NCBI GenBank assembly: GCA_964035545.1
Contig: OZ037767.1
Span: forward strand, 3,111,680 to 3,175,679
Direction of reading: 5' to 3'
Source of the DNA: Bugula neritina
Taxonomy: Eukaryota; Animalia; Bryozoa
Length of the DNA stretch: 64,000 nucleotides
Shown here: positions 4,906 through 26,010 of the stretch, in pieces
How the letters are laid out: each line of letters starts with the position of its first letter
Position numbering within the stretch: the first letter of the stretch is position 1
Translations under genes and position numbers: made by a program
The notes under the pieces: model-generated
What the model was told of the DNA's origin: nothing
Database searches by the model: none
Seen by the model: only the letters and a program-made list of their open reading frames with translations

Positions 4906-7900
4906 ATGGAAGTTCCAAATCGGATTTACATCTCTCTTGGTATGCTAAAATTATCTTATACAAGACTAAACATTTCTGATTAAAATTTCCCTAAAACATT
5001 CACAATATAAGATTTGAAGTAAATATATGTTGGTGTTTAAAAAGTTTTTTTCAAAAAATTTTTGCATGTTGAAAATTCTATGCATCTAAAAAATTATCCA
5101 ATTATTTACATTAATATGGACATTATACTTGATGTTATGAATATTATATTCAACCTGGTTATGCCTCAACAATGCTATTTTGTGTTAAATTAATTCTAAT
5201 ACAGTATATGATAGAATAAGATACAGATGGGAAATTTGTTTAGATAATATCATATTGGGGCTAAAAATGCAAAATAATATTATTTTTTATATATTCACAG
5301 TAAAACATAGTTGATTCAGTCATGCAATGTATCATATTATATAGATAGTAAAAGTAATGCACTTAATTTATTATCATTATTATTATTATATAACACTTTA
5401 TATCATAAAATTGCTTTATGCAGTTTTTTCTATGTTGATTATTTTGCAGCAACCCTTCTAAGAGTTTACTTTGCGCTGTCGGCATCATGTCCTACATCAT
5501 TTCCTGTTTCAATTTCCAATTTCTGCTACAAGCTATCAACAACAAAAGCCAACGCTGTCAATGCCAGGCAGCAATGCGCTCTCTTAGGGGCTGACTTAGC
5601 AAAGATATACGACATAGAGGCAGCAGTGGTAGACGAGTTTGCTGCTGTGATTTCTACCAGTCTGGGAAATAAAGGTCAGCAAGACATCTTGTTTTAACTA
5701 TACCATTTACTTAAATAATATCGATACAGTTTATAAAGTTTTCCAATATGCAATGGTTGGAGATCTATAAATGTAATTGTATAAATATCATATGTTCTAT
5801 ATGCATATAAGATAAGAAAATACAATTTTAAGACAAAAAACACAAATATGAATAGCAATACAAGTTGATTATCAGTGTCTCAAAGTTTATAGTTAATTTA
5901 CTAAGTCTCTTTCTTTATCCTCATTCATCATGAGTATTCTCACATTATTAGGACTTGTAGGGAAGCAGAATTTAGAAAAATCTTGGTAAAAACCATGCTG
6001 CTTCCAGTGGGAATAAAGCAGCAGACATCCAACTTGCAAGCACGCTAACCCTTATACTAAGGGAGCTACTGGGGAATCCCGACACCACAAATTCCATTTT
6101 TGCTAAATCTATGAATCAATGCAGTATTTTTCCGATACAGCTGTAATTCTTTCAACTGAATTTCAGCGATTTTAATCCTATTTACAGTTTTATATGTAAA
6201 ATAAATAAAAAATAAAATCAATTAAGGATTCAAGTCCTGACTCCTACTTTAAAAGCAAAAATATGCCAAAATAAAGTGAAAACAGTTTGTGGCAAATAAA
6301 TATTTGTGAGTCATTGAAATTGTTCAACTATTTATTTTGCCTATCAATGTTTTATCATTCCATGTCTGTATATGTAACAAAAATTTAGCAGGTGATCGGT
6401 AACTACAAATTTCACCTGAAAATCTTATATTTCAGAAGATGATGCCATATTTTTTCACAAATACTTTTACATCCATTTACAGTTGATAGTTTTAGCTCTA
6501 AAGTTTAATGTTAAAGTTTCAATTTATACCCAATTATATGTATGTAATGAAAAAAATGACAATATAATTATACCTAGCAGAAAAAATTGTAATTTGTTAA
6601 AATTACAGACTCATTATTACTTGAACCAGCTAGGCTTATGTAAGCTGTATGACATACTTGAGAGGATGATGAATATTGTTTCTAGCCGAAGTTTATATTG
6701 GTCTGACCAATCTAGTGGCTGATGCAAATAATCCGAAGTTCATATGGCTGATAGACGATGAACAACTACCTCTAGACAAAGTAAAGGAGCATGTTAAAGA
6801 TAATGACTACGAACATCTCAACTGCATTTCATTTTTGAAAGCAGGTATGTAATTGGACGGTGCTCAAGTACCGTAAGAGATAACACTGTTAGGTTTTGGG
6901 GTTTGGAGAGCATAAATCATATGGCACGTTTCTACTTTTTAAATTCTGGACCAGAGGAAATTCAATAAAGATCTATAAGGAACTAGGCTGGTTTTTGCAA
7001 TTAGTCTTTACTGGTGCTTATTTTATTATGTTTATAGATTACACCACATCATCAATTGATCATTATGCTACATAACATAACTTGTCCACTAGCACATATT
7101 TTTGTCAAGTGGCTGCATTTATGAGCTAGGACCTCATTGAAGACACAGCTTTTCTGGAGAAAGCTTAGGATCAAGCTTTGCATATATTTTTTCGCTACAG
7201 CATATATGTTGAACATTATTTTTTAATACTTCAACAATCGAACTGCTAATTAAGTTAATTGAAACAATAAGAATTAAGTACTTTTGGTTCTCACTATAAA
7301 TGTTTATACTGCAGCAAAAGTCTCTAGAGCTGAACTACTTCATAACTATTAGCTATTAACCAAACGTGTCATTAAAATATATGCAAAATGTCACGGGATT
7401 ACAAGCTGTAACATGGTCACCTCTGTATGTAGCAACATACTCTGTTGAAATGCTTTGAAAATGTTGTAACTTTTGATAACTATCATTATTAGCGTATACA
7501 TTGCTCTCAAGACTTTTTTATCAAACTATTTCTGTATAACATACTATAGATTATAGGATATTATAATATATATATATATTAGTATATTAAGCATCATAAT
7601 ATAATATGTTACATAAATTATATATTGTGAATGTTTTTATATCATGTTGATTGTCAAAGTTATTATTGTCACTATATGTAAAATATCTATAATAATTTAT
7701 AACTTCTGAAAAAATTAGTTTTGTAGTCTATAATGCACCTTAAGATTAAAGATTTCATAAATTGTATTTATCTAATTTTTTTTAAATTTTGCATAAAATA
7801 GAAAAATTAGTATAAATGTAAAATCTGTGAATTCTTGACTTTGATAGATAAACAGGAGATCCACTGCCACAAGGATTATGAAACTAAAGAAAAGTACTAC

Positions 7901-8776
7901 CTCTGTCAGGAGAAACTCACAACAACTACAACTACTACAACACCAACTACAACAACTACTACAACCACTACAACAACTACAACTACAACCACTACAACCA
8001 CTCCACCAACTACCACTACACCAACTACAACCACTACACCAACTACAACCACTCCACCAACTACCACTACACCAACTACAACCACTACACCAACTACAGC
8101 CACTACACCAACTACCACTACACCAACTACAACCACTACACCAACTACTACTATAACCACTACAACACCAACTACTACTACACCAACTCCAACACCAACT
8201 ACAGCTACTACTTCAACTACAGCCACTTCACCAACTACAGCTACTACACCAACTACAGCCACTACACCAACTACAGCCGCTACACCAACTACAGCCACTA
8301 CACCAACTACAACCACTACACCAACTACAACCACTACATCTACTACAACCACTACTACCACTACACCATCAGTTTATACAGCCGAAACATCTCTAACAAT
8401 TACCACCACAGCACAAACTGCTACACTTATATCAACCCCTGTCAGCACAACAAATACTGTTAGATCCACCACTGCCACTCCTTTAATATCAAAATGTCGC
8501 CAGGGTACGTCGTACAAGAAAGTCACTAAGAAGTTTAATTTTTTACAGCTCCACACACACCAGAACTTCCTAGAACATACAGAAGTGCAGACGTACAGCT
8601 ATTGTGTACACTGGTGCTCGGTTCATAAAGATTGTAACAGCATTATCATATTTGATGAAATATCATGCTGGTTCTTTTCTAATTTAATGCTGTCAGAGGA
8701 AGTAGCTGATCGAAGTGGCAGAAGCGGCCTACTCTGGTACAAACACGAAACTAACAGTGCGAGTCATGATTTGTAG
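4906..8776 (+). CDS. Lectin-mucin-PAN gene A (exons 4906-4939, 5450-5674, 6686-6844, 7848-8776; 448 aa)
   Basis: Three phase-1 GT-AG introns give an open 1347-nt CDS: signal peptide, CTLD ([35 protein letters not shown]), ~190-aa Thr/Pro stalk, PAN/Apple-like Cys pattern ([19 protein letters not shown]). Exon 1 is the least certain. Confidence 0.85.
5998..6068 (-). mobile_element. Degenerate tRNA-derived sequence (possible SINE head)
   Basis: The minus strand reads GCTCCCTTAGTATAAGGGTTAGCGTGCTTG...TTTATTCCCACTGGAAGC, with A-box-like and decayed B-box-like motifs. It cannot form an intact cloverleaf. Confidence 0.3.
7918..8370 (+). repeat. Coding (ACA/ACT/ACC/CCA)n repeat encoding a PTTTTT mucin stalk
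   Basis: Degenerate 15-18 nt units such as CCAACTACAACCACTACA inside gene A exon 4. Confidence 0.9.
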
Positions 8777-8919
8777 TTGCACTAAAAAGTTACATTAGGT
8801 TTGTTGTGGAAGTTGTTTAGCTTTTAACTGCTCTTGTTTTGCTAAATTGAATCCAGTAGACACTGTTGTTATATAATATGAAAACTAAATGTTAAATAAT
8901 TGAAGACAGTATAAATTAC

Positions 8920-9348
8920 AATTGGGTCATTTTACTTAATTTAGTACACACTCGAAATCTTCAGTTTTTGGCTATTTTTCACAAGTTAGCTGGTAATGAA
9001 CATGGTTTTTTGGCCAAAACTAGTAAAACACCAATAAATACACCTAAATAATCAAAGTTATTTTTAATTTTGCTTCATTTCCGATGTTTTTCCCTAATTA
9101 TTCAGCTAGTTTTGGTTACGGACCCGTTGAGGTTTTTCGTAAGCTCCACACATATAGAATATTAAGTGCATATGACAATGACCTGTGCTTTAATGTTGGG
9201 GAATCCCCTTCCAGCCTTTTCTGTTATGCGTAGTTAAAACCAGCACATAAAAATAGCACGTATAGTAAATTTCAATGGATTTTGAGCAAACTTTAATGTT
9301 AGGTCATAATTTGCTGGTGTGTACTAAATGAAGTAAACTGACACAATT
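8920..9348. mobile_element. MITE-like element with ~32-bp imperfect terminal inverted repeats
   Basis: AATTGGGTCATTTTACTTAATTTAGTACACAC (8920-8951) versus the reverse complement of 9317-9348, AATTGTGTCAGTTTACTTCATTTAGTACACAC. Non-coding interior; no clean target duplication. Confidence 0.65.
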
Positions 9349-9997
9349 TATATCTTGATAGTATTAGCGGTTGTAGGACCTGCCATATAAAGCAAAATTT
9401 GGTTTGTTGGAATTCACAAATGAAAATATTTGGAGATTTTTCTTTTACACAGGAAAAAAGTATAAAGCTAGAACAAATTTTATTTTGAAATCATCTCATT
9501 TATTCGTTCCTAATAATGCACAATCATAGTTATTGATACAAATACTAACGTAAGAACTGCAAATGTGAAAATTGTAATTGCAAAACAGTATTTGGTTGGT
9601 TATGCAAAGACTTTTAGGCTCATTGCTCAGCATTTTATTGCATAAAATTGCACACAAAACAGCTACAGTTTTCTGTGTCTGCAAATTTATCGCTTTCGGT
9701 CTGTAGAAATTAAATTTATATGACATAATATGTCATTATTCTTATATGCTTGCATGTAAATAGAAAAAAACTTCCTAATCGTTGAAAGAAAACAATCATC
9801 AAACCTAAATATAATGCAGTACTTTTGATTTATGGTGTATGTAGGGGTTACTCAGTGCTCACTATCAGGTCAAATCCTGAAAGATTAGTTACAGTTAGGC
9901 CGGTTATAGATATAATATGTAATATAGCTAAATGCTATTGTTAAGCTCTACAGTTTCTAGCACTTGATCACAACTTTATGCATGAACAATAATATAT

Positions 9998-10392
9998 TGT
10001 AAAGAGTTTTAGTATTGTGTTTCCAATTAGTTAGTTTATATCGAAGGAATAACTCTATTTCGGACAGTTACATGATGCAGCCAGCATCATGTCGTTAGGA
10101 TGGCACCACCATGTTAACCAATGAGAGGTGACTAACAATTATTAGGAGGCGGAGCTGCAAACGTGTAGTGGAAGCTTGTCAGGTAGCGTAGCCGGCAGAG
10201 TGGATCGAGTTCTAATCATGCAAAGTTGTGTATAAATCACTCTCTATTATGTAATCGTGTGCATTAGTGTTTTATTAGTTTTATTTCTGTAAAATTCGTA
10301 AATAATAAAGTCTATTCAAATTGTGAGCAACCTGGTGAAGTGGCATTGAATAAGTAGACCCACTAATTATAGTGAATCGTAAATTCACTACA
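9998..10392 (+). mobile_element. Solo LTR (395 bp, Gypsy-like 4-bp target duplication)
   Basis: TGTA...TACA termini flanked by ATAT (9994-9997 and 10393-10396). Internal CCAAT (10118), GC box (~10146), TATAAA (10231) and AATAAA (10304) in the expected order; less AT-rich than the flanks. Confidence 0.75.
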
Positions 10393-11354
10393 ATATGCTA
10401 CTACAAAAATACTAATATACTTATGCTGCTGACACAAAACATTATAAAGCAATCAGACCAAAAGTGTAACTATTTATACAAGTTTGTAATTCATACTTGT
10501 AATCATATAGATTGGCTAAAAGTTTTAAGAAGCAAATCTATCTTAGAAATTGCCGGACTATCAAACCTTCATAGACTAAAATATAGTCATGCTTATATAT
10601 AACAGATATCACAGGTTGATTAAAAAACAGGATAAGTCTTAATTCATGGAAGTTTTTATAAGAGCAGATGTAAATTTACTCTATTAATAGAAACCTTTTC
10701 CATGGCAGTGCTGGATAGTCTCTATGCAACACATGGTATTACTGCAGCATTGAAAACTATATCTGCACACAAACCTGCGTGACAAATATCTGAAGCTTTG
10801 TGTACAGGTAAAGCAAGCTCTTTTATTACATAAGATACTACTTATAAAGATAAAAAAAATCTATTTTATTGAAAGTATATTTATTTTGTCATTTCAGGCA
10901 GCAAACATAAAATCAAACACTTATATAGAGAACAATTATTAGTATAGTAATTGTTAATACGGTATATATATATATTGCTTATTTATGTTGAAACTCTAGA
11001 ATTCAAAATGCTTGCTGTGTCAAATATAGGTTAGGCCTGACCTACAAAATCTATAATTTGTTTTCCTGTTATTTTAAGCAATATCCATATAACATTATTG
11101 ATGTTTTAGTAAACAAATTCAATCAATTATTTTTAGCAACAAAACCTTTGCATGGCATAGCAGCTATATCCTAAAACTAATAACAAAGCAAATTTAATTT
11201 AAGAAAATTTTATAAACACAATATTTTGATAGTTATAAGCTTTCCTTCCTTTATTGATCACTGCAAGGCTGTAAAGAATATATAAGATGTTTCAATATAA
11301 TACATTCAACAACTAATGCCAGTAATACAGTGAAGAGTAGATGTAACAGAAGAC

Positions 11355-13467
11355 ATGGAGATAACCAGAGTATTAATTCTGGCAATGCTAGGTAAGACTG
11401 ACTGCTAGCTCACTAAGTGACAGCGCTATAGTAGTTTATAGTGTTTTAAAAGTATCAGCCAGATGAAACCATTAGTAGTTAATTTTGGAATAGAAAAATG
11501 AAGAATTGAAAAGTAAATATAATACTGACTAATCACATGACTTCCTGTAAAAATAATATCTGAGGGTGTATCATTCAGCCATCTTTTTACTACTTTAGTT
11601 GCAGCACAATGTGCCAGCTGATGTAAAGTTGACAAGACCAACTGTGCTCTATTTACTAGTTGAAAACAAGCTCCTATACAACCCAATCGCCGTTTTCTTT
11701 AATAATTGAAATTAGTTTAAATTTAAAGGCATTAGACCTTCTAGTTATATATACATCTTATATGTACATAATTGCTTTTTTTGACAGTAAAACTGGGTTC
11801 CACAGTGTGTTCTGGAAATTTCCCACATTCTCTTAATAATCAGGACTGCTATCATGTTCCAAACACCTCAAGCCCCAAGTTACCTCGAGTTGCAGCAGAA
11901 GCTGTTTGCCACTCCATGGGGGGACAACTGGCCAAGATACACAACTTAACTGATGATCAGGTCTTAGCTGATTTTATGGACATGGTGCTTCAAGAAGGAT
12001 ATAATGACAGTGAGCAGAATCTTTTGATGAAATATATTTTCTAGTTTTACAAATTGCTAATGTTTGATTACCTAATTTGCCAGCAATTATTGATAGTTCT
12101 CAACTAATACATATAAATAACATTATTTTGCATATAATGAACATTCAGTGTGACTAAACTGGTCCCTGCTTTAACTCCATATGGTGTTGAAGATTTATTT
12201 TGTTAATGTTTAAGACTAACCCTATTTTAATGTATGTAGAGGAATTCCATATGGGACTGGTGAAACAGAATGGTGTTATTTTCTGGTCTTTGGATGAAGA
12301 AATAATGACAGATGAAGTTATCGAAAGCTCTATTGATGAGGATCATGAAGATTTTCAAGACTGCACTTTCTACTGGAGCTCAGGTTGGTACAGGCAGAGG
12401 GAAAATTAGTTTCTGTTTCAGTTTCACCAACATAAATCACAAAATAATTTGAATAGGTTCAATGTTGCAACATTTTATCAAAATTAAAAACAATTATGGT
12501 GGCAAAATTATCTATCTGTAACTTTACATTTGTGTAATACAGCAAGAACAATTATTAGTATAGCAATAGCAGTAGTGTTGATCATGTGATGGTAAAAGTT
12601 AGGAATGAACTTTTGTGTTTAATTGCAATAATAATGAAATCTGTGAGAATATTGTTGTGAATTAAAACATAAGAATTATGGAAAATAACCACTAGAAAGT
12701 TTTTTCTACTATGGCAGCTTTACAACCAACTATCATAAAATATGGCAATGGCAACTTGCATATTTGTAAGAATTCTCTTTTAACCTCTTATAGAGAACGG
12801 CACGTTCTTTCCCCAAAATATGGCATCTATGAGTAAAAAGCACTATATTTGTGAACAAGCTGTGAATAATGTTTCGTTGTCATCCACCACCACACCAACT
12901 ACAATACCCACAACAGCTACATCAACCTCTATGGTACCACCTGTTACTACAGCTGATTCCACAACTACCAAAGTTATAACAACTGCTGCAGACCCGACCA
13001 CAACTTTAAAAACATCAACTACAACAAGCTCTACCACACCTACAACTACAGCAACATCAAGTAATACAACAAGCTCTACCACACCTACAACTACAGAAAC
13101 ATCAACAACAACAACAAGCTCCAGTACAACACAAGCCTCAACAACCACAACAACAGATCTCACAACTACAACAGCGAATATGGATCCTGAATCTACATGC
13201 ATCTGGTACAAGTATGTTACAGAGTCACTGGATGAACAAAAGTTACAGCTACATGAGAACTTTCTGGAACACAAAGATTTGCCAGTTTACAGTGAATGCC
13301 TCCGACATTGTTCAAGTAACCCAGCCTGTAACAACTCAGTGGTATTTGATCAGACATCCTGCTATCTCTTCTCTGATCTTCAAGTAGCAGATGTGAAAGA
13401 AGGTTCTGGAACAGTTGGAGTTGTCTACACAAAAAGAGAAAGCTTTTGTACTCATTGTAAGCCATAG
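11355..13467 (+). CDS. Lectin-mucin-PAN gene B (exons 11355-11391, 11788-12009, 12240-12383, 12794-13467; 358 aa)
   Basis: Phase-1 GT-AG introns give an open 1077-nt CDS: MEITRVLILAMLVKLGSTVC signal, CTLD (DCY..AEAVCHSMGGQLAKI..HMGL..IFW..DC..YICE), Thr/Ser stalk, PAN-like domain (ECLRHCSSNPACNN..SCYLF). Confidence 0.9.
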
Positions 13468-14282
13468 AAACAAAGCTTTTCTTTTTAAAATAGCATTTTT
13501 AAAATAGCAATTGAGCTTAAATTTGAACGTGTTGTTTTAAAGGGAACAAAATCCATTTTATTCAAGTTTGGCTAATTAATATAGTTTTATAGTAAAGTTA
13601 TTTCATGAATGGTTGCATTTTATTACTCGAGTTTGAAAAAAAACAAGAAAAACATGACTAGATACGTAAATTCCTTTCACTTATAGCTATATTAATTACC
13701 TTCTTATGCAAAATGTATGACATTTTATACCATTACTTTTATTAAAACAGCATGTATGTGTTGACTTCAATGTGGTGTTTGAAAACACTATGTTGGAGTT
13801 GTCTACACTATGTTGTAAAACTCAAATTTTAGGTTGAACAGCAGACTTGCTTTTAAAAACTTCAGTTATTTATATTTCTGTCAATAATAACTTATTATAT
13901 GTTACTATGTTATATTTTATATATTTTAAAATACATACTAATAGTATATATTATATTTATGCAACATATTAATGACAACTTACTAGATTATTCTTGTAAT
14001 GCAGTTGTGTTGACTAAACTTTGAAAAAGAGTGAATATATTTCTGCCAATAGTAATATTGTGATAAACTTTTCATTTCTATGTTTTTGTGCTTTTTCTTT
14101 ATCTAAACTTTTCAATTATCTGCTGGCATGCTTGACATCAAAGGCTGATTAGAGTAAAGTTTCTTGAGCTGTTTTTTGAACAATAAATTTTTTTTGTAAA
14201 TCACCAACAATAAATGGAATAATATTTGCATTTCATGAAACGAAAAGTCTTAAGATGCTGTAAGATATGCTCTTTGTACTTT

Positions 14283-14425
14283 ACACTCTGCACTTTGCAT
14301 GTGCACTCTGCTCTCTGCAACTGCATTCTGCACTCTGCGTCTGCACTCTGCACTCTGCGTCTGCACTCTGCTTTCTGCTCTTTGCGTCTGCACTCTGCTC
14401 TCTGTACTCTGTACTTTGCACTCCT
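14283..14425. repeat. (CTCTGCA)n 7-mer tandem repeat
   Basis: Visible 7-nt period. A second copy with the same flanks (AAAGTCTTAAGA...AAGTTATCTAAGACAC) lies at 18693-18848. Confidence 0.85.
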
Positions 14426-15309
14426 CATTTTGTAAGTTATCTAAGACACTATATATTTAAAAAAAATTTCTAGCTAAATATTCTGAAAGTTTTAATCTAA
14501 CACCTATAACATCAACATTTGTATGATTTTTTAGCTTATGCAATACTTTGATTGTGCTAGAATCTTTTTGTATCCTCTAACTGTTGATGTTATAGCATTC
14601 TACATGCTACACCCAACTAAATCAAATTTTAGTCTATCAGCGGTCTAATCAAAATTCAAAAAGTTGGCTCATATTAGAAAACTCTTAACTTAAGCAAGTG
14701 TCACTTAGAAATTATATTATAGTATCAAATATTTGAATCTCTGTCTGCAGGTAAAGCAAACTTTTTTATTGCATAAAAGTCCATTTATTCAGATTAAAAA
14801 TAATTATTCTATGTTACGGAAGAAATGTTTTATTTTTCTATCATTTCTGATAAGAGACTTGAAATCAACCATAAGTTAATATTTTTTAGAATTGTCATTT
14901 TTACTAGTGTATATATAATTCATTTATGTTATAACTCTGAGGTCCTAAATGTTTGTTTTGTCAAATATAGGCTACGCCTGACCTACAAAATGTACATTTA
15001 TTTTTAATAATATACTGATATATAACAATATAGATGCTTTGGTAAACAAAATCAATGGTTTGTTCCTTTTAACAAAACCTTTGTATTACATAATGTTTCT
15101 TTGCATTACATGCCGCTTCCAGCACCCATATCCTGCCAATTTGTAGCAAAGTAAACTTAATTTAATAAAATTTAATCATCACAATATTTATAAGTTTTCC
15201 TTCCTTTATTGACCACTGCAAGGCTTTAAAGACTATATTAGATGTTTTAAAATAATGCATTTAGCAACAGACACCAGTAATTCAGTAAAGGATAGATGTA
15301 ACAGAAGAC

Positions 15310-17618
15310 ATGGAGATAATCAGAGTATTAATTCTAGCAATGCTGGGTAAGACTGATTATTAGCTGAGTGAAAGTGTTAGTAGTTTATAGTGTTGTATTT
15401 ATTCACTTGAAATCACTAGTAGCCTATAGATAAATAAATATTTGAAAAGTAAAGATAAAACTGACTGATCGCATGACTTTATGTAACTGCAAAGTAATAT
15501 CTGAGGTTGGCTCGCATTTTTTAGTCATATTTTCACTACTTCAGCTGCAGCGCAATGTGCCAGCTATTATAAACTAACTATGCTCAATTTATTGGTTAAA
15601 GCAAGCTTTTATAATATATTACCCAATAGCCATAATTTTTACAGTTAGTTGAAGTTAATTTAAATGAGCTGCATTAGAACGTCTAGTTGTATACATTATA
15701 TGTTGACAGCAAAGTTGGGCTCCACAGAATGCTCCGGAAGTTTCCCACATTCGCTTAATAATCAGAACTGCTATTATGTTCCAAACACCTCAAGCCGCAA
15801 GTTATCTCGGACTGTAGCAGAAGCTACTTGCCATTCCATTGGGGGAGAACTGGCCAAGATACACAGCTTAATTGATTTTAACACCATTCTTAATTTCACA
15901 GGCATGGTGTTTCGAGAAGGCTATAATGATGGTGAGTGGAATTTTCTGATGAAATTATATCTGTATATTCCAGTTTTACAAATTGCTATAATACTCCGTT
16001 ACGTAATTTGATAGTTAGCAACTAATACATATAAATAACATTATTTCTCACAGGAACGTTCAGTATGACTAAACTGGTTCCTGCTAACCCCATATGATGC
16101 TGAATACTTATTTTGTTAATGATTTAGGCTAACCCTATTCTAATTTGTCTGTAGAGGAATTCCATATGGGACTTGTGAAACAGAATGGTGTGATTTTCTG
16201 GTCACTAGATAAAGAAATAATGACGGATTGGTCTATCAATGAATTTGTAAATAATAGTCACACTGGTTACCAAAACTGCACTTTCTATTTGAGCACAGGT
16301 TAGTAAAGGTAGTGAAGTAATTGGCTTTTGTCTCAGTTTTACTCACATAACTCACAAAATGATTGGTTGGGTTTAATCTCGCAGTGTTTTATCAAACTTA
16401 AAGTTTATAATTCCAAACATATGATGGGTAAGTTATCTTTTGCAACTCTAAATTTGTTTACTACAGTAATAGCAATTAATAGTATAGTAGTAGTGTAACA
16501 ATGATAGATGTTAAAAGTTAGAAATTAACTTTTGTGTTTGATTGAAATATTAATGTGTGGATATTATGTATGTTGTGAATTAAAGCATATAAATACTAAG
16601 GAAATAGCTATTAGCAAATTATTTTTTCTTCTATGAAAGCTTTATAATGAACTATCATAGAATGTGGCAATGGTAACTTTCATATTTGCTAAGAATTCTC
16701 TTTTAACCTGTTATAGAGGAAGGCATGTTCTATCCTCAAAATATGGCATTCACTAGTCTAAAACATTATATTTGTGAACAAGCTTCATCGTCACCCACCA
16801 CCACATCAGCTTTAATACCCGCAGCAGCTTCAACAAATTCTACAGGACCACCTACTACTACAGCTGATTCTACAACTACCAAAATCATAACTACTGATGC
16901 AACAACTACGGGAGACCTGACCACAACTAGCACTACAGAAGCATTGACAACTACAACAAGCACTACCACACCAACAACTACAGAAACAACAACAACTACA
17001 ACAAGTTCTACCACACCACCAACTACAGAAACATTGACAACTACAACAAGCACTACCACACCAACAAATACAGAAACATCAACAACTGCAACAAGCTCTA
17101 CAACACCAACAACTACAGAAACAACAACAACTACAACAAACCCTACCACACCAACAACTACAGAAACATCAACAACTGCAACAAGTTCTACCACACCAAC
17201 AACTACAGAAACAACAACAACAGGCACTACCACAACTACCCAAGCATCAACAACCACAACAAGCTCCAGTACAACAACTACACAAGCCTCAACAACCACA
17301 ACAACAGATCTCACAACTACAACAGCGAACATGGATCCTGAATCTACATGCATCTGGTACAAGTATGTTACAGAGTCACTGGATGAGCAAAAGTTACAGC
17401 TATATGAGAACTTTCTGGAACACAAAGAATTGCCAGTTTACAGTGAATGCCTCCGACATTGTTCAAGTAACCCAGCCTGTAACAACTCAGTGGTGTTTGA
17501 TCAGACATCCTGTTATCTCTTCTCCGATCTTCAAGTAGTGGATGTGAGAAAAGGTTCTGGAAAAGTTGGAGTTGTTTACACAAAAAGAGAGTACTTGTGT
17601 ACTCAATGTAAGCCATAG
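15310..17618 (+). CDS. Lectin-mucin-PAN gene C, recent tandem duplicate of B (exons 15310-15346, 15710-15931, 16155-16298, 16717-17618; 434 aa)
   Basis: Same exon 1-3 lengths as B (37/222/144), alignable introns and UTRs, open 1305-nt CDS, longer stalk. Confidence 0.9.
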
Positions 17619-18692
17619 AAACAAAGCTTTTCTTTATTAAAACAAAATTTCTAATTTTGAAATAATTGAGCTTAAATAAATGTGTTTTTTTTAAAAGTAT
17701 ATAAAATCCATCCTTAAAGGACATGGCGATGAAATGTTAACACAGTAAGATTAGGCCTTCTAGAAAACATTATTGATGAGATTACAACAATCTTGTATAA
17801 AATGTGACAACAAAACAATTTGTTGCACGTGTATAATATGCTGTTTAATTTGCAGTGTGGTTTTTTTCATAATCTTTTAGCAAGTTTTATTGTTTTCCAT
17901 TTCTTGCGAGTTAAATGTAGCCAATTAATTTAGTTTTATAGTGAAATTAATTAAACTTTGTTGCATTCAATCAAGATTTTATTGTAGACATTTTGAAACA
18001 ACAAAAAATTTAACTGGTTACCAAGTGATATAGTGATATAGTATGTAAATAAATTGCTTTAACATGCTGCATGCCACCATCTTCTGTAGTTAATGCAAAT
18101 GAAATTTAAAACCATTTATTTTGTTAAAGCAGGTCCTGTTTTCCATGAAACACACTACTGAAACAATTAAACACGAAGTTTAACAGCAAAATTGCTTTCA
18201 AAACTTATAATTTATTTATTCTGGTAATAATAACTTATTATATTATAATGTTATAGAGTTTATATATATACAAGTATATTAACATAAATGTTGTTAAAAA
18301 TATCATATATATCTTTATTAATAATCTATTACATTTTATTTCAAGTAAAATATATTAACAAAAACTTATTAAACTATTATTCTTGCAATGTCATTTCAAT
18401 GATTAAACTTTCATAAAGTGAACATATTTTTGCTAATAATGATTGCTTTTGTAATAAACTTTTGATTTATACATGTATAATGTTAAGTTTTTTTAATTTC
18501 ATTTTTCTCGATTCATGCAAACTTTTTCAATTTTGTGATGACATGTTTAATATTAGTGACTAAACAGAATAAAGGCTGTTGAACTGTTAGTTAAACAAGG
18601 AATGTTCTTGTAAAGTACCATCAGCAACAAATTGACTAATTCGAATTTCATGAAGCATGGAGAATAAAAAGTCTTAAGAAGTAAATAAGATG

Positions 18693-18848
18693 CTCTCTGC
18701 ACTCTGCATTCTGCACTCTGCATTCTACACTCTGCACTCTGCACTCTGCATTCTACATTCTGCCCTCTGCACTCTGCATTCTACACTCTGCCCTCTGCTC
18801 TCTGCACTCTGCACTTTGTGTCTGCACTCTGTTCTCTGCATTCTGCGT
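18693..18848. repeat. (CTCTGCA)n 7-mer tandem repeat, paralogous to 14283-14425
   Basis: Same unit and flanks; marks the 3' end of the B/C duplicated block. Confidence 0.85.
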
Positions 18849-20039
18849 CCACAAGTTATCTAAGACACAGTGCTGAGTCTATGATCACATTACATGTATT
18901 ACACAACTTGGCAGTCAAAAATATGCTTCCAAGAAAGATATAAAAGACACCAGCTGCTTTATTGCAAACAGTGTTGAGTATAGCAGCCTTAATATACAGA
19001 ATTAGAAAGAAGTTGTCTTCTCTACATATTGTGTGGTGAATTTAGAGACATCTGTTGATTGAGAGATTAAAGAACAAAGTGATCATGTATCTACCGCATC
19101 ATATGATGTTATAGACAGAAAGGAAGCTTTGATTTTGCAAATGTTAATGATTAAAAACCACTTTAAGTATTACAACAAATAACTGGGCTATTTTTTCCTG
19201 CAATCGATAGAAATTTAAACTTGTTAAACAAAATAATCCAATTCACGGCCCTTTTCAAATTTATTGATTACAGATTGCTATAATTAGCATAATTATAATA
19301 CCCTGAAGCAGTTACTGCATTGAGCAAATCAACCTGCAAGGTTACACCTTGAAATTTATTAAAATATCAATAATTATGAAAGTTTTGCGAGTTGCAAGCC
19401 ATAAATATTTGGAATATTTGGTAATAATCACATAATTTATAGAGCTGTTTTAAATCAATCTATTTTTGCACATATATTACAATCAGTAAAATATTTAGTA
19501 AAACTTGATATTTTAGCTTAAAGACTATATAAGCTATTGGGAACTTTATCAAAATGATATATGTATAAAATATAATGATGTGTGTCAATGTTTGGAAATG
19601 TTGAAAAACCGGTCTATGCTATATCTATATACCACCTGCATATACTTCCTCACACCTACACATAAGCACACATACACACATGCATACATATACGCACAAA
19701 AACATACATAAACACACATATGCATACATATAATACATACATATACATATATTAAATCCCAAGTAAATGTTATGTTGCACAAAATGATTTTTTTCAAGTT
19801 AATCTCTACAAGCTTGGTAGTACAGCATATAAGTTAATTTAGTGAATAGAAAAGTTATCACGACTTGGTTTACTATCCATTTAACTGGTTTTCTGGCACA
19901 GCTGAGTGTATATTATAGTAGAGAGAAAACCAGCTACTGCATCATAGAATACAGACTGAGCGAGAATAATAAAACTATATAAAAATAGAAAGTAGCTCAA
20001 TTAGCTAATTTTTTGTTCACCAGGATTCATGTCTATGGC

Positions 20040-22480
20040 TCACAATAGACATGAGTTTTCTAATTTTGTGTAGACAACTCCAACTTTTCCAGAACCTTCC
20101 TTCACATCCGCTACTTGAAGATTAGAGAAGAGATAACAGGATGTCTGATCAAACACCACTGAGTTGTTACAGGCTGGGTTACTCGAACAATGCCGGAGGC
20201 ATTCAAGGCTATTTGGCGAGTCTCTGTGTTCTAGAACGTTCTCATGTACCTGCAACTTCTGTTTATCCAGTGACTCTGTAACATACTTGTACCAGGTGCA
20301 TGTAGGTTCAGGATCCATGTTCGCTGTTGTAGTTGTGAGATCTGTTGTCGTGGTTGTTGATGTTTCTGTAGTTGTAGGTGTGTCAGAGTTCGTTGTAGTT
20401 ATTTGTTCTAATGTAATTGGTAATCGTGATGCAGAGGTTAATGTGCTTGTGAAGATTTCATTAGTGACTTCTGTCGCTATGGTGGTGAAAGGTGAAGATG
20501 CTGTCGTAGGCGTTGAAGTGGCTGTATCATCACCTTCACTTGTTACGAGAACCGAAGAAGTAGAAATCGAAAGAACAGGTTGCGTCACAATTTTGGAGAA
20601 AGAGGAGTTTTCACAAATATAGAATCTTTTCTTTACAGAGTCTGGTGACTGGAAGTTCAATTGGTTGCTATCTGTGGGATATAATTTATATATATTGATT
20701 GGAATTTTGTAAATTGAATTATTAATCATTATATTCCATTGTTCTATACAATATTTATTTGATCACATTATGTTTTCTTACATTTGAAATATGTTCATTT
20801 AGATGCAGCAGTAAAGAAATTGAAATAGAGGTAAAGTTTTTAATTTTCTTAATAAATTTGGGTTTTGAGAATGGGGCTAAAATTTTCACAAGAGCATGAC
20901 TTCTTTTACTTCATTTTTGATCTAGAACACAGGCTAGTCTCAACTTTGTCATTACAGCAACCACTTCAACATGTTGGCTGACAGGTCAACAATTACTGCA
21001 ATGACAAAGATCTAAGTAGGCTACAGCTATTAGTATCTGCCAACGATTTAAATATTATTATACCTGAAAATCAAGAGTTGCAATATTATAAATGTAGTTA
21101 ATTATGACCTGAAAATGCTACTTATTAAGAAATAATATAATATCTGTCTTGGTTAGTAATAACCAATGTGAAATGCTTTTAAATCCTGAACATAGAGTTG
21201 ACTGCTTTATAGTAATGCAGTTTAATTACGCGGTCAGTGGAATCATCAGATCTCATAAAACTTAACAATTATTATGTGAATTTCCTTATTTATTCATAAA
21301 TAATAAACCAGTGACATATAAGTGGAAGTAGGTAGCAGCTGTGGTCTAGGGGTTAGAGCGTTTGCCTAGTAATCACATTGGCGATGTTAGGAAGAGCATC
21401 CAGTCATAATTGCTCCTGTGCCCCATCTGAATAAGTCCTAAGCCCGATTTAACAGAATACCTTTTAATCAGGGGTTTCTCACAGGGATAGTGACTATAAA
21501 CCTGCGTGAGTTTTATATATAAGTAGAAGTAAGTTATAGTTATTTAGTAAGTTAGACTACATTTCATTAGTATAATAGGTAGACTGTATTTTATACTTTT
21601 ATAGTGCAAGCAAGTAGGCTATATTTATAAATAGTTATAGTAAGCATAAACAAAAATTATAGTTGCATAGTTAAGTATGTGTATAAGTTATAGTTATATA
21701 GTAGGTGAAAGAAAGTTATATACTTATATAGTAAGTATACCTGAAGACACATAAAATGTACAATTCACATCCCCAGCATGATCTTTCTTTATGAGAGAGT
21801 GACTAACTCCCAACTCTACTGTCTCTCCATCCGCCAGCCAGATAAACTCATTGTTTTCTTTGATGAGCCCAATGTGAGCTTTTTCTAAATGCAATATTTT
21901 GTTGGATAAAATGTATTATGGGTATGCAACAGGTTTTAAAAATGCAGGCAAGAATATGAAAATCTATGGTAAAGAGCTTTTTGACCAATATAATATATTA
22001 CATTGTATTGATAAAATTAGGCTCAACAAGCTATTTCTGCTTACAATAATTATTTTGTTTTCAACTATAGATGGGATGGACAGGCATATGATTCATACAG
22101 CTTGTAAATGTTTCAACAATTTAAACTGAGTCTTCATAGCAAGTACTTATGGGACAAGCTTACCACTTCCTAAAGTGTTTAGTATCACATTGGAAAAGCT
22201 TTGAATTGAGGCAAGACTTAGGTCGTATATTCTGGCCAAGTCCCCTCCCATGTCTTGGCAACTTTCTCTTGCTCCTTTGAAAACCATACTGGAATTTGAA
22301 ATGAAGTAACAATGTGCATTTATTTCTACAGGGTATTCTTCTGGGCATGATGCCATATTTGTTCCTGCTACTGCAATTAGCAACCCTGAAAAAATATTTT
22401 TATAGATGTATAGTTATATTATTATATATGCAATATAATATATATACATTAATAATATATTAATATATATAAATTGTTTA

Positions 22481-22538
<58 letters not shown>

Positions 22539-22750
22539 GGTAATTCAGTGTACTATGTACAGCTAAGGTTATCTCATATGTTATATATAGCCATTGATAT
22601 GAAGTATACATATACATGCTGTTATGTAGTATATTACATATAGCATGTTTTCTCGATATAAACTTAAATAATTTGCAGACATTTAAAATCATGATTAAGC
22701 AATTTTATGCTATACTTACTCCATAATATGATATTTGGCCAAAGCTTCAT
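20040..22750 (-). CDS. Lectin-mucin-PAN gene D (exons 22750-22720, 22385-22164, 21884-21741, 20671-20040; 342 aa)
   Basis: Phase-1 GT-AG introns give an open 1029-nt CDS: MKLWPNIILWRLLIAVAGTNMASC, CTLD (HCY..ARESCQDMGGDLARI..HIGL..FIW..NC..YICE), Thr/Ser stalk, PAN-like domain closely similar to B/C. Confidence 0.88.
21331..21516 (+). mobile_element. tRNA-derived SINE in intron 3 of gene D
   Basis: tRNA-like head (TGGTCTAGGGGTTAGAGCG). 15-nt flanking direct repeat ATATAAGT(G/A)GAAGTA (21316-21330 and 21517-21531). The 3' half recurs at ~57056-57150. Confidence 0.7.
22478..22535. repeat. (TA)n microsatellite in intron 1 of gene D
   Basis: Direct inspection. Confidence 0.95.
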
Positions 22751-23980
22751 TACCCAAGAATCTGTTAAACTTATTCCATACAAGCAAAAGTCAGCCTTCA
22801 ATTAAAAGCCAAAAAAACTCTAATGTTCTCAAAATTGGTCAGTATGTCAAACACTGATTAACCATTGATTTTTAAATTAGCTCATAGGTAATATTATTTT
22901 CTTTTATACCTTTCTTTGTATAAAAATCTTTGCATAATTGTACTTTCAACAATACCAGAAATTGCCAGCTTTATAATCCTTTGCTCTGCATTTGTTTAAC
23001 TCTGATTGGTGGACAAAAACCTGGTGAGGTATGTTTTGTGCATTAGTTTCGAGTAGCAATTTCATAAGTAGAATTCAATATTAAAATCGACTAATGTTGT
23101 AAAAATACTTTATGCTTTAATTGACAACCGGTATTGCTTTGTCACAATAAATATGTTAGTTGACAACTTTAGTTGTATGCACATTTTGCTCTATTGCGGG
23201 CACTCGCCTACCGTTCACACAATTTACCTGGGACTGTAAGAAGTACCTTGGCTACAGCTGAGGCTAATTCATGAACATAAAATGTCCAATGCAAATTAAC
23301 TAATTGCATGTAAAGTATAGTATTTTATAATGTTTATGGTTGGTACATGAGAAATTGAATCATTACTCATATTTATCAAGGTTTTCAATTTCATGAATAT
23401 TTCAGAAAAGTACAATTATCTCTGTTGTTGATTTTATTAATCAAATTAAAAAGTTGATAAAATAATAAGAAAAACAATAGAATTAATGATACCCTGTTAT
23501 ATATTGTTAGTTTAAACTTTAAGTTATAAAAAAGCAGTTTAAAAATTAAAATGATTTTGGCTGTAGAACCGAATTATATTGAACAATGAAATAAGAGCCT
23601 ATGAAACAAGCAAGATTGCATGAACCACTAATCATCAACCAATATTGACATGATGTCCATTAGTGAAGTAGCCATGCTGAAAGATGACAGATTTATAGTC
23701 ATTGTTATAGTGTAATACAATACAAATGTAAATACATTCTTCTGGAACACTATTATAAATAAAATATTCTAGAATAAAAAAATCTGATCCGTTTTAGAAT
23801 GTGATAAGAGGAAGGGAATCTCTCATTTTTAATTTAAAGTAGTTTATTTGCATATATAATATTTCAAAAATGACTTCTTCAAATAAAAAGATATAATGTC
23901 AAGTAGATCATATAATAACTGAACAATTGTTGACTTTCACAATTTTCAAAACCCAATTTAAAAATTAATGGAAAGCCAGG

Positions 23981-23990
23981 TATATAAATA
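23981..23990 (+). promoter_or_regulatory. Candidate TATA box of gene E
   Basis: TATATAAATA about 35-43 nt upstream of the ATG at 24024. The AT-rich background lowers confidence. Confidence 0.4.
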
Positions 23991-24023
23991 GAGGCAATTT
24001 GTCACATTCAGGGTTATTTGAAA

Positions 24024-26010
24024 ATGGGGCTAAATTTTACCAGCTTTTCTTTCATATTTCTTCTTTTAGGTAAAATTATATCTTTAATCAACAAATTTTC
24101 TACAAATTTTATTACAAGTACCAACAAGCTCATAGTATTCTTACTTCATACAATACACTATGTATAATAATATTAGACATGTATATATACAAGTATTTTA
24201 TATAATATGTAATATACTACATATATAGGTGTGTGTTTTAAGGGGGGGAATAGAAGTTTCTAATCTTTGGTAAGTATTATGCTTAGAACTGAGACTATAG
24301 ACCTTAAAAAGAACTACACTTAGGTACCTATTTTTCTCTTTCAATTTAAATAATATAACTGTGTATGTTATAAAAACATTTAAACAGATGTATAGTTATA
24401 AGTTCATGTGTCACACTATACAACCTTTGTGCAGCTTTTAAAAAACTAATATATTCTTAGGGTGGGCGGTAGCTACCCCCTGCCCGGCAGAGTATCCAGA
24501 GCAGTTTGGTGACTCATGCTTTTCTGTGAGAGGCTCAGAGTTGGTGCAGCCTCTGGAAGCTATGATTAGCTGTAATGGAATGGGAGCCTCCTTGGCACAC
24601 ATTCCAAACTTCAGTGTTCAGGCAGCTAAGAACTTTGCTGAAAGACTTGTTGGAGATTACAATTTGAGTGAGTTGAAAACTTTACCCAGCCTTCCATTTA
24701 AAGTAGCATGATTTCTAATTACATGGTGACATTATTAGGTTGTTAAGATGATCTTTAGAATATCTATTGTGCTTTATATAAATATGTATGGTAGTTTTCC
24801 CACTTGTGGCGTATGTATTAAGCATTAAAACCTTTTCTTCTAACATTTGCTCAATATGTGGGAGGGAGGGGATTAACATAACAATAAACAATTAATTAAA
24901 AAGTGAATAGCATTTAAAAGAATTTTCAGTTTACAGTTATTTTGTGATTACAAAATTTGCGCATTTAAATCTCAAATTAAACCATTATAATACAGTTATA
25001 ATAGAGATGTAGCTACTACAGTATATCTGTTACAGCTGATGCCTACATCGGCTTGCTCTCTGTTGGAAGAGGTGATGACTTCTACTGGACTGCTAGCTCT
25101 GAGACCATATTGAATGAACAGCTGAACCTGGGCTACAACGTCACTGAGCAATGTCTTTTTTCTATCAGCAACAGTAAATACAACTACTAAAACAATAAGA
25201 TTAAAGTAACATACTAAGAAAAGGCTCTGTTTTAAAGTTCATTCCATTAGAATCTTTCTATAACACTATACAGCTTTCAAATTAATAAAATCAATTTATA
25301 GGAAAATATCTATAATAATGTTGAGAGTCAAATATCCATGATTATAAGTAAAAAGTGCAGTAGTATATAATAATAGACTTCATACAATTACTGCCAGTTA
25401 GTATATCAAACAGGATGTACCAGTGAATAAATTTCTGTCAATATAACAGAGAGTTGAAGATCGTTTATCTATGCACCTTATGAAACCCAATAATTACCAA
25501 ACAAATGCATCTAAAATTTAAAGTAAGTAAATATAGCATTAAGATTTTGTATAAGCTTTTGACTCTTATTTGATAGGTGGAGAGCTCATCTGCCACGCTA
25601 CCAACAACCTGGCTGCTCCACGTAAACCATACATATGTGAGATAAATATTCCACCGACAGTCAACGCGAGCACATCCACTGTAGCATCTACATCGACTAC
25701 TGAGACTACCATCAGCTATTCTCAAACCACAAGTAATGCCACCCAAGAGCTGAAGAAATGTCGTCCCACATGGTACAAGTATCTCGCTACAGCTATAAAC
25801 CAACAGCAGCTACACCTGCACCAGGATTTCCTGGAGCACAAGGACCTGCTGGTCTACAGTGAATGTCTACTATATTGTTCAACTAATCCAACTTGCAGAA
25901 AGGTGGTGGTATTTGACCAAACGTCATGCTATTTTCTTTCAGATGGTCCGTTGCCAAATCTAGAAGCTTCACTCCCGGGGACACTGGGAGTTGTCTACAC
26001 TAAATATTAA
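24024..26010 (+). CDS. Lectin-mucin-PAN gene E (exons 24024-24069, 24461-24667, 25036-25173, 25577-26010; 274 aa)
   Basis: Phase-1 GT-AG introns give an open 825-nt CDS: MGLNFTSFSFIFLLLGWAVATPC signal, CTLD (SCF..AMISCNGMGASLAHI..YIGL..FYW..QC..YICE), short stalk, PAN-like domain (ECLLYCSTNPTCRK..SCYFL). Confidence 0.9.

What the first reader, a model, noticed from the sequence alone, without database searches (positions are those of the whole stretch)
4906..26010. Five-gene cluster of secreted 'dumbbell' proteins: atypical C-type lectin - mucin stalk - PAN/Apple domain
Seen: five intact 4-exon paralogues, all introns phase 1, each with a signal peptide, a CTLD, a Thr-rich linker and a C-terminal PAN-like Cys pattern. 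None has a transmembrane segment or hydrophobic GPI tail. The ORF track shows only fragments of them. Established: CTLD and PAN/Apple domains are both glycan- or protein-binding modules, and O-glycosylated Thr stalks act as extended spacers. Inference: a lineage-specific family of bifunctional cross-linkers, with a variable recognition end and a conserved anchoring or effector end, acting in mucus, adhesion, skeletal matrix or innate recognition. I do not recognise this architecture as a named family.
Basis: partly seen in the sequence, partly recalled or inferred. Interest (0 to 1): 0.8.

Follow-up and report, generated by a model that had tools for sequence, protein, structure and literature searches.

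The report
Bryozoan secreted CTLD-mucin-PAN gene cluster
A moss animal (Bugula neritina) carries five neighbouring, intact genes for secreted proteins with a lectin-like head, a sugar-coated threonine-rich stalk and a PAN/apple tail. The domain combination is undescribed, but it is one more product of a genome full of PAN-plus-lectin families, and its function is untested.

Summary
Window 4906-26010 contains five intact paralogues (four on +, one on -). Each has 4 exons, GT-AG introns all in phase 1, and no internal stop; products are 274-448 aa.

Each encodes:
- a hydrophobic N-terminus;
- a long-form C-type-lectin-like domain (CTLD) split over exons 2 to 4;
- a Thr-rich tandem-repeat stalk of 33-198 aa;
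- a C-terminal module that AlphaFold2 folds confidently (pLDDT 87) and that matches about 40 solved PAN/apple domains (Z 6-8.2).

None has a second hydrophobic segment.

The genome is B. neritina (216 Mb). A diverged cryptic sibling assembly keeps the cluster with conserved splice sites, only in-frame exon indels and dN/dS of 0.12-0.3 for most parts. One unidentified metagenome contig holds a 31-40% identical homologue with the same exon plan.

The CTLD lacks EPN/QPD and WND, so canonical Ca2+-dependent sugar binding is unlikely. The "conserved tail" is partly gene conversion: PAN dS is 0.25-0.30 where the heads are saturated.

No named family has this architecture. However, this genome has at least 120 PAN exons, and earlier notes of this scan report PAN+CTLD, PAN+F-lectin, pentraxin-PAN and NHL-mucin-PAN families on other DNA of it, not this cluster.

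Verdict: real genes and a new variant of known kinds. The cross-linker function remains an inference.

The parts
4906..8776 (+). Gene 1 (448 aa). Exons 4906-4939, 5450-5674, 6686-6844, 7848-8776. CTLD spans exon 2 to about 7897; mucin stalk 7898-8491 (198 aa, 66% Thr, 18-bp repeat about 25 times); PAN module 8495-8773 (five Cys, no sixth).
   Evidence: The sibling-species orthologue has all parts and a conserved exon 1 ATG and donor. This is the copy closest to the metagenome homologue L015.
11355..13467 (+). Gene 2 (358 aa). Exons 11355-11391, 11788-12009, 12240-12383, 12794-13467. Mucin 12862-13197; PAN 13198-13464 with a C-terminal C-x2-C.
   Evidence: PAN dN/dS against the sibling species is 0.12.
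15310..17618 (+). Gene 3 (434 aa). Exons 15310-15346, 15710-15931, 16155-16298, 16717-17618. Mucin 16785-17348 (45-bp unit, 6.4 copies); PAN 17349-17615, which is the folded model.
   Evidence: Head exons have dN/dS 0.83-0.86 and PAN 0.15 against the sibling species.
20040..22750 (-). Gene 4 (342 aa, minus strand). Exons 22750-22720, 22385-22164, 21884-21741, 20671-20040. Mucin 20543-20301; PAN 20300-20043.
   Evidence: The orthologue EB796_021390 (P0002) is annotated without exon 3. PAN is homogenised with genes 2 and 3: dS 0.25-0.30, where head dS is above 2.
24024..26010 (+). Gene 5 (274 aa). Exons 24024-24069, 24461-24667, 25036-25173, 25577-26010. Short stalk 25648-25746 (33 aa); PAN 25759-26007 (five Cys, no sixth).
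   Evidence: The orthologue EB796_021391 (P0003) is annotated as the last exon only.

Best explanation
SHOWN: a five-gene tandem family of Bugula neritina, real and under purifying selection. Each gene encodes a protein with no membrane anchor, built as follows:
- an N-terminal secretion-signal-like segment;
- a long-form C-type-lectin-like domain that lacks the canonical calcium and sugar ligands;
- a Thr-rich tandem-repeat stalk of variable length;
- a C-terminal divergent PAN/apple domain.

INFERRED mechanism: the proteins are secreted and the stalk is densely O-glycosylated and extended. This holds two independent binding modules 10-50 nm apart, so each molecule acts as a bivalent bridge or tether in an extracellular layer such as cuticle or apical matrix, mucus or larval adhesive.

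The PAN tail is the more conserved end in four of the five copies and is homogenised between copies. It most likely docks to a common partner, a matrix protein or polysaccharide, as PAN domains do in HGF, LAPP and microneme lectins. The CTLD heads, 21-40% identical between subfamilies, most likely bind different protein or non-canonical ligands without the classical Ca2+ site.

An odd cysteine count (11 in genes 1, 4 and 5) leaves room for disulfide-linked dimers. That point is speculative.
For: Gene reality:
- Intact frames, canonical phase-1 splice sites.
- In the roughly 84-88% identical sibling assembly, splice sites and exon-1 ATGs are kept. Exon indels are 36, 15 and 3 nt, whereas intron indels are mostly not multiples of three.
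- dN/dS is 0.17-0.29 for genes 4 and 5 and 0.12-0.25 for PAN.
- There are six copies in the sibling assembly against five here.
- A 31-40% identical homologue with the same four phase-1 exons lies on metagenome contig L015.

CTLD:
- The exon-2 profile hits 72 solved CTLDs. DEC-205 scores 2e-14; single-domain hits score 2e-5 to 1e-4.
- The profile hits nearly every CTLD of 13 multi-CTLD proteins, and the exon-4 head matches the ends of those domains.
- Exon 3 aligns to a WIGL segment in register.

PAN:
- AlphaFold2 pLDDT 87.4.
- Foldseek top hits are MANEC, LAPP and HGF N, with probability above 0.9.
- VIA-align Z is 6-8.2 for about 40 PAN/apple entries.
- The nearest ESM Atlas clusters with a Pfam family (ranks 2-3, 0.92) are PAN_1/PAN_4; the rank-1 cluster (0.94) has none.
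- Sub-threshold Pfam hits fall only in MANEC, PAN_1, PAN_3 and PAN_4.
- The profile hits bona fide PAN_1 exons of this genome.

Stalk: composition and repeats.

No anchor: hydropathy.

Head/tail asymmetry.
Against: - No expression, secretion, glycosylation or binding data were obtainable.
- SignalP was not run, and gene 1 has a weak h-region.
- The whole CTLD could not be scanned or folded because that needs joined exons. Single exons stay below Pfam's cut-off (16.2 bits against 22.6).
- The exon-3 profile has no match in the PDB.
- The two NCBI models with CTLD exons skip exon 3. Skipping would keep the frame, because the exon is symmetric.
- Tail conservation is partly conversion rather than functional constraint.
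- Gene 1 shows no head/tail asymmetry.
- PAN matches have middling Z values (6-8), and Foldseek E-values are above 0.02.
Confidence: 0.55

Rival explanations
1. Soluble immune or symbiont-recognition receptors. The diversified CTLD heads would recognise microbial or non-self surfaces. The PAN tail would recruit a common effector or cell-surface partner, acting as an opsonin or agglutinin rather than a matrix tether.
For: - The heads differ strongly between copies (21-40% identity).
- In the gene 2/3 lineage, head exons evolve at dN/dS 0.8-1.1 while PAN stays at 0.12-0.15.
- Copy number differs between sibling species, 5 against 6.
- The genome holds many expanded PAN-plus-lectin families that earlier notes read as recognition repertoires. 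Those notes are unchecked leads.
Against: - There are only five copies.
- Genes 4 and 5 have heads under clear purifying selection (0.17-0.29).
- The canonical sugar-binding site is absent.
- dN/dS near 1 rests on about 30 substitutions and on orthology blurred by conversion, so positive selection is not shown.
Confidence: 0.25
2. Plain gel- or coat-forming mucins. The Thr-rich stalk would be the functional part (lubrication, hydration, antifouling coat). The terminal domains would serve only folding, oligomerisation or secretion, not two-ended bridging.
For: - The stalk is the largest part of genes 1 and 3 (198 and 188 aa) and expands by tandem repeats.
- Odd cysteine counts could support disulfide multimerisation, as in gel-forming mucins.
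Against: - Gene 5 has only a 33-aa stalk but fully conserved end domains.
- Both end domains are under purifying selection.
- In the gene 4 orthologue comparison exon 4, which holds the stalk, has 36- and 15-nt indels, while the head exons have none.
Confidence: 0.12
3. Annotation mirage or decaying genes. The models would not be expressed as drawn, for example with exon 3 not used, so the N-terminal domain would not be an intact CTLD.
For: - The AUGUSTUS models of the sibling assembly, EB796_021386 and EB796_021390, omit exon 3.
- That annotation used transcriptome hints (PMC7576161).
Against: - Exon 3 is 138-159 nt in all five copies and open in all orthologues.
- It is 96.5% identical with dN/dS 0.17 in gene 4.
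- It has conserved splice sites.
- It is present in the distant homologue L015.
- The same NCBI models are clearly incomplete in other ways: one lacks exon 1 and the CTLD end, and another is the last exon only.
Confidence: 0.05

Closest known systems
Group XIV CTLD glycoproteins (CD93, thrombomodulin, CLEC14A, endosialin/CD248)
   Same: An N-terminal non-sugar-binding CTLD is held on a Ser/Thr-rich mucin-like stalk, and the CTLD binds proteins rather than glycans. The CD93 CTLD is among the PDB hits of the exon-2 profile.
   Different: Those proteins are type I membrane proteins with EGF (and sushi) repeats, a transmembrane helix and no PAN domain. Here there is no TM segment and the C-terminus is a PAN/apple fold.
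Lecticans (aggrecan, versican, brevican, neurocan)
   Same: The same dumbbell logic: two globular binding ends, one of them a CTLD, separated by a long, heavily glycosylated extended region. They act as extracellular cross-linkers. This rests on established knowledge.
   Different: Lecticans have Link modules, EGF and CCP domains and glycosaminoglycan attachment, and their CTLD is Ca2+-dependent and C-terminal. None of these is present here. The only Xlink signals are weak N-terminal CTLD-like hits (E 0.04-0.18).
PAN-plus-mucin apical matrix proteins (C. elegans LET-653, Drosophila NompA)
   Same: Secreted proteins that combine PAN/apple modules with an O-glycosylated linker and act in apical extracellular matrix. 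This is from my own knowledge and was not tested here.
   Different: Those carry a ZP domain and N-terminal PAN modules, and have no CTLD.
Plant G-type lectin S-receptor kinases and apicomplexan PAN lectins (SRK, TgMIC4, SML-2)
   Same: A lectin head together with a PAN/apple module, or PAN acting as a lectin itself. SRK, MIC4 and SML-2 PAN domains are among the structural matches (Z 6.0-6.7).
   Different: The lectin folds differ (bulb-type rather than CTLD), those proteins have kinase or membrane context, and they have no mucin stalk.
Other PAN-linked families of the same genome (pentraxin-PAN cluster at C3:29.76-29.81 Mb; PAN+CTLD and PAN+F-type lectin arrays in earlier notes)
   Same: Secreted recognition-type domain plus PAN, in tandem arrays. 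Earlier notes also report PAN-limited gene conversion. I confirmed PAN_1 exons beside pentraxin exons and at least 120 PAN_1 exons genome-wide.
   Different: This cluster has the order head-stalk-PAN with a mucin spacer. Its PAN is too divergent to reach Pfam's cut-off. Its CTLD has no close relative elsewhere in the genome.

Membership tests
C-type lectin-like domain superfamily (CTLD; Pfam Lectin_C) | N-terminal half: long-form Cys pair (C-P-x-x-aromatic ... C-Y/F) and the helix-1 Cys with the G-x-L-A-x-I motif | tested here: met
   Alignment A2. The profile hits 72 PDB chains, all CTLDs; the best single-domain E-values are 2e-5 to 1e-4. It also hits nearly every CTLD of 13 multi-CTLD proteins.
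C-type lectin-like domain superfamily (CTLD; Pfam Lectin_C) | WIGL motif and the following aromatic-x-W-x-D strand, collinear with the N-terminal half | tested here: inconclusive
   Y/H-I/M-G-L followed by F/I-x-W is present in all five copies. hhalign places it on a WIGL segment about 14 residues after an exon-2 match in P0008, but only at E 0.017 and probability 2.7%. The exon-3 profile finds nothing in the PDB.
C-type lectin-like domain superfamily (CTLD; Pfam Lectin_C) | Core disulfides C1-C4 and C2-C3 | tested here: inconclusive
   C1, C2 and C4 are present in all five copies. C3 is present only in genes 1 and 5, so C2 is unpaired in genes 2-4. Disulfide pairing itself cannot be tested here.
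C-type lectin-like domain superfamily (CTLD; Pfam Lectin_C) | Pfam gathering score, and CTLD fold of the whole domain | not testable with these tools
   The domain is split over three exons. Single exons reach at most 16.2 bits against a cut-off of 22.6. Scans and folds of the joined sequence were left out.
Ca2+-dependent carbohydrate-recognition domain (C-type lectin in the strict sense) | EPN or QPD tripeptide plus WND motif forming Ca2+ site 2 | tested here: not met
   None of the five exon-3 peptides or exon-4 heads contains these motifs (alignments).
PAN/apple domain (Pfam PAN clan) | Core cysteine pattern C-x3-C-x5-C-x10-C (two nested hairpin disulfides) | tested here: met
   These cysteines are invariant in all 11 rows of alignment A4, including the distant homologue.
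PAN/apple domain (Pfam PAN clan) | Outer (apple-type) disulfide, first to last Cys | tested here: inconclusive
   The first Cys is present in all copies. The last Cys is present in genes 2, 3 and 4 and in L015, and absent in genes 1 and 5.
PAN/apple domain (Pfam PAN clan) | Fold: five-stranded sheet packed on a helix | tested here: met
   AlphaFold2 pLDDT 87.4, pTM 0.76. VIA-align gives Z 8.2 for the plasminogen PAp domain, 7.3 for HGF N, 7.1 for LAPP, 7.0 for MANEC and 6.2-6.7 for FXI and prekallikrein apples, with 70-88 of 100 residues aligned. Foldseek's top hits are the same set.
PAN/apple domain (Pfam PAN clan) | Pfam gathering score for PAN_1, PAN_3, PAN_4 or MANEC | tested here: not met
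   The best scores are 13-17.7 bits against cut-offs of 21-27. Support is indirect only: the profile matches bona fide PAN_1 exons of this genome at E 8e-5 in a 30-kb six-frame set and at hhalign E 0.0018.
Mucin-type (PTS) domain | Long Thr/Ser/Pro-rich tandem-repeat region | tested here: met
   33-198 aa with at least 13 T/S/P residues in every 20-residue window; Thr up to 66%; 18-bp and 45-bp repeats. O-glycosylation itself cannot be tested here.
Secreted, non-anchored protein | Cleavable signal peptide, no TM segment and no GPI signal | tested here: inconclusive
   The N-terminus is hydrophobic, there is no other hydrophobic segment, and the C-termini are hydrophilic. Exon 1 is conserved in the sibling species. 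No signal-peptide predictor was available.

The most novel reading that the evidence does not exclude
In bryozoans the PAN/apple module would be a universal docking tail (or head). It would plug many unrelated recognition domains (CTLD here, and pentraxin, NHL propeller and F-type lectin elsewhere in the genome) into one shared partner in the cuticle, matrix or a cell surface. That would amount to a phylum-specific modular recognition or matrix-assembly system, kept compatible by PAN-limited gene conversion. This cluster would be the version with a long mucin spacer.
Probability: 0.15. Interest if true: 0.65.

Novelty: new variant of a known kind. Interest (0 to 1): 0.42.

Why it matters
Bryozoans are a phylum with almost no characterised extracellular or immune proteins. 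B. neritina is also a model for larval settlement, biofouling and a vertically transmitted bacterial symbiosis.

A small, clean family with two different binding ends on a mucin spacer is a tractable candidate for cuticle or adhesive assembly, or for surface recognition.

It is also a compact example of two processes:
- domain-limited gene conversion, where the PAN tail is homogenised across inverted neighbours while the heads are anciently diverged;
- a CTLD that has lost the sugar site.

The value is moderate. All the modules are known, lineage-specific shuffling of them is common in invertebrates, and nothing about function has been shown.

Tried and rejected
I switched to coordinates only.
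- Pfam on single exons gave only sub-threshold hits.
- The exon-3 profile against the PDB gave nothing.
- Two word-index protein searches found only Bugula proteins. No correctly spliced full-length protein exists in the databases reached, so the whole CTLD could not be scanned or folded through a database id.
- The 1.84-billion-protein search used alignment A1, which carried the CTLD half of P0002. Thirteen of its 15 hits are therefore generic multi-CTLD proteins that match only that half.
- A JGI metagenome scan with the PAN alignment found no further relatives.
- A weak PAN-profile hit at C3:16834142 (L022) is not a PAN gene.
- The WSC-propeller array region (L032) shows the Cys pattern at the ends of ORFs, but no significant HMM or Pfam match to this PAN.
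- Literature searches for CTLD + PAN + mucin, for bryozoan apple domains and for lectins in the B. neritina transcriptome paper found nothing relevant.
- Rejected readings: a Link module (the hits are the CTLD-like N-terminus only), an antifreeze-type function (merely CTLD homology) and pseudogenes (all frames are intact in two species).

Full report
ORGANISM AND SETTING

The window is AT-rich (26-35% GC over the cluster). It lies at C3:3111680-3175679 of a 216,009,554-base, 321-contig assembly. The nearest database proteins are Bugula neritina hypothetical proteins EB796_021386, _021390 and _021391. The size matches the 216.00-Mb Darwin Tree of Life assembly tzBugNeri2.1 from Plymouth (PMC11480708).

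The older GenBank draft (VXIV02003181.1, loci L016 and L033) is syntenic. It is about 84% identical in BLAST pieces and 86-91% at aligned intron and intergenic sites. It therefore serves as a diverged sibling; B. neritina is a complex of cryptic species (PMC11480708).

GENE MODELS

Splice sites were scanned from coordinates and assembled into five models:

| Gene | Strand | Exons | Product |
|---|---|---|---|
| g1 | + | 4906-4939, 5450-5674, 6686-6844, 7848-8776 | 448 aa |
| g2 | + | 11355-11391, 11788-12009, 12240-12383, 12794-13467 | 358 aa |
| g3 | + | 15310-15346, 15710-15931, 16155-16298, 16717-17618 | 434 aa |
| g4 | - | 22750-22720, 22385-22164, 21884-21741, 20671-20040 | 342 aa |
| g5 | + | 24024-24069, 24461-24667, 25036-25173, 25577-26010 | 274 aa |

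All introns are GT-AG and phase 1, and there is no internal stop.

The exons were joined only inside a script. That was used to count length, frame, cysteines, hydropathy and composition.

Every search was made exon by exon, by reference. The whole-CTLD Pfam scan and fold are therefore missing.

ARE THE GENES REAL?

- Against the sibling assembly, every splice dinucleotide of g4 and g5 is kept.
- Exon indels are 36, 15 and 3 nt, while introns carry many indels that are not multiples of three.
- All orthologous exon pieces are open.
- dN/dS is 0.17-0.29 for the g4 and g5 head exons and 0.12-0.25 for PAN modules.
- Exon 1 keeps its ATG and GT donor in all orthologues.
- The sibling has six copies (three of the g2/g3 type) against five here.
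- Metagenome contig L015 (ENA ERZ27264286, k141_469815) carries a homologue 40%, 40% and 31% identical to g1 in exon 2, exon 3 and PAN. It has the same phase-1 junctions and a 440-aa ORF for exon 4 that ends in the PAN module and is 36% Thr overall.
- Whole-genome searches with exon-4, PAN and exon-2 profiles find only the five window copies.

HEAD DOMAIN

The exon-2 profile (A2) hits 72 solved structures, all CTLDs: DEC-205, PLA2R, mannose receptor, CLEC4, CD69, type II antifreeze, CD23, DC-SIGN and CD93.

In 13 multi-CTLD proteins it marks nearly every repeat. The exon-4 head marks the end of the repeats, just before the next exon-2 match.

Exon 3 has a WIGL-like motif and aligns in register to a WIGL segment, but weakly. 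It has no PDB hit of its own.

EPN/QPD and WND are absent. The C3 cysteine exists only in g1 and g5.

The head is therefore a CTLD with a degenerate long-loop region. It is not a predicted Ca2+-dependent lectin.

STALK

The stalk is 33-198 residues, with Thr up to 66%. It is built from 18-bp repeats (g1, about 25 copies) and 45-bp repeats (g3 6.4 copies, g2 2.4 copies). In the g4 orthologue comparison, the exon that contains the stalk carries 36- and 15-nt indels.

TAIL DOMAIN

- Single-sequence Pfam hits fall only on MANEC, PAN_1, PAN_3 and PAN_4, and all are below cut-off.
- AlphaFold2 on an 11-row alignment (A4) gives pLDDT 87.4 and pTM 0.76.
- Foldseek ranks the MANEC domain of HAI-1, LAPP, HGF N, SRK PAN and FXI apple first, with E 0.02-0.3 and probability above 0.9.
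- VIA-align gives Z 6-8.2 for about 40 PAN/apple entries, covering 70-88 of 100 residues. The tool warns that Z below 8 can be a common arrangement. Here, however, nearly all top rows are one fold, and the C-x3-C-x5-C-x10-C pattern fits it.
- In the ESM Atlas the rank-1 cluster (0.94) has no common Pfam family; the next clusters (0.92) are PAN_1/PAN_4.
- The profile also finds bona fide PAN_1 exons (Pfam E 1.6e-10) in the pentraxin cluster of this genome.

HEAD-TAIL ASYMMETRY

Between g2/g3 and g4, the heads are 27-40% identical with saturated dS. The PAN modules are 76-81% identical with dS 0.25-0.30, although g4 is inverted. This is the signature of gene conversion, or recent exchange, of the 3' part of exon 4.

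g5 against g2 shows PAN at 56% and head at 21-26%, with both dS values saturated. That indicates real constraint on the tail.

g1 shows no asymmetry.

In the g3 positional orthologue, head exons have dN/dS 0.83-0.86 against PAN 0.15. The counts are small, so this shows relaxation or diversification but not proven positive selection.

HOW WIDESPREAD IS IT?

In 1.84 billion representative proteins, the PAN part matched only P0003 (the Bugula g5 orthologue) and P0005 (the L015 protein). The other 13 hits matched the CTLD half only. A JGI metagenome scan added nothing. Literature searches found no description.

This genome has at least 120 PAN_1 exons over Pfam's cut-off.

Earlier notes of this scan describe related families on other DNA of the same genome: PAN+CTLD arrays, PAN+F-type lectin families, pentraxin-PAN, WSC-propeller-PAN, NHL-mucin-PAN and PAN-limited gene conversion. 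I verified only the pentraxin-PAN neighbourhood and the PAN expansion.

INTERPRETATION

Shown:
- the anatomy of the proteins;
- purifying selection;
- lineage restriction;
- conversion of the tail.

Inferred:
- secretion;
- O-glycosylation;
- a two-ended bridging role in an extracellular layer.

A soluble recognition role is the main rival. The architecture is a new variant assembled from known modules.

NCBI MODELS

EB796_021386 and _021390 omit exon 3, and _021391 is the last exon only. They come from AUGUSTUS with transcriptome hints (PMC7576161). They do agree with my exon 1-2 junction and my exon 4 acceptor.

Noticed in passing
window 14284-14423 and 18691-18846: Heptamer minisatellites (units CACTCTG and TGCACTC, about 20 copies each) lie downstream of g2 and g3. 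The sibling assembly has a much longer array of the same unit (L016 about 13.2-14.1 kb), so the satellite was duplicated with the gene unit.
   Followed up: partly
window 20672-21740 (g4 intron 3): About 757 nt of this 1069-nt intron have no counterpart in the sibling assembly. This is an insertion here or a deletion there, possibly a mobile element.
   Followed up: no
L033 (VXIV02003181.1:202740-225521): The sibling species has three g2/g3-type copies (six genes in all) against two here. One copy is annotated as two separate genes of 134 aa and 296 aa.
   Followed up: partly
L015 1-3931 (ENA ERZ27264286 k141_469815): A metagenome contig of unknown, probably bryozoan, origin carries a g1-like CTLD-mucin-PAN gene with the same four phase-1 exons. 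The gene caller annotated the antisense Val-rich ORF of the stalk as a 280-aa protein.
   Followed up: partly
window 7906-8361, 12843-13274, 16766-17425 (-) and 20164-20622 (+): Long Val-rich ORFs lie on the strand opposite the stalks. They are mirror images of the Thr codons, not genes.
   Followed up: yes
window about 28000-64000: GC rises from about 0.30 to about 0.40. ORFs of at least 110 aa there have no Pfam match, apart from a weak DUF3517 hit at 35896-36234 (-), so a different, intron-rich gene probably lies there.
   Followed up: partly
G000 genome-wide (for example C1:2.8-4.2 Mb, C9:4.9-5.2 Mb, C3:29.75-29.81 Mb): At least 120 exons match Pfam PAN_1 over its cut-off, clustered in large arrays. 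This is a very large PAN expansion in this bryozoan.
   Followed up: partly
window 22415-22535: A (TA)n microsatellite of about 60 units lies in intron 1 of g4.
   Followed up: no
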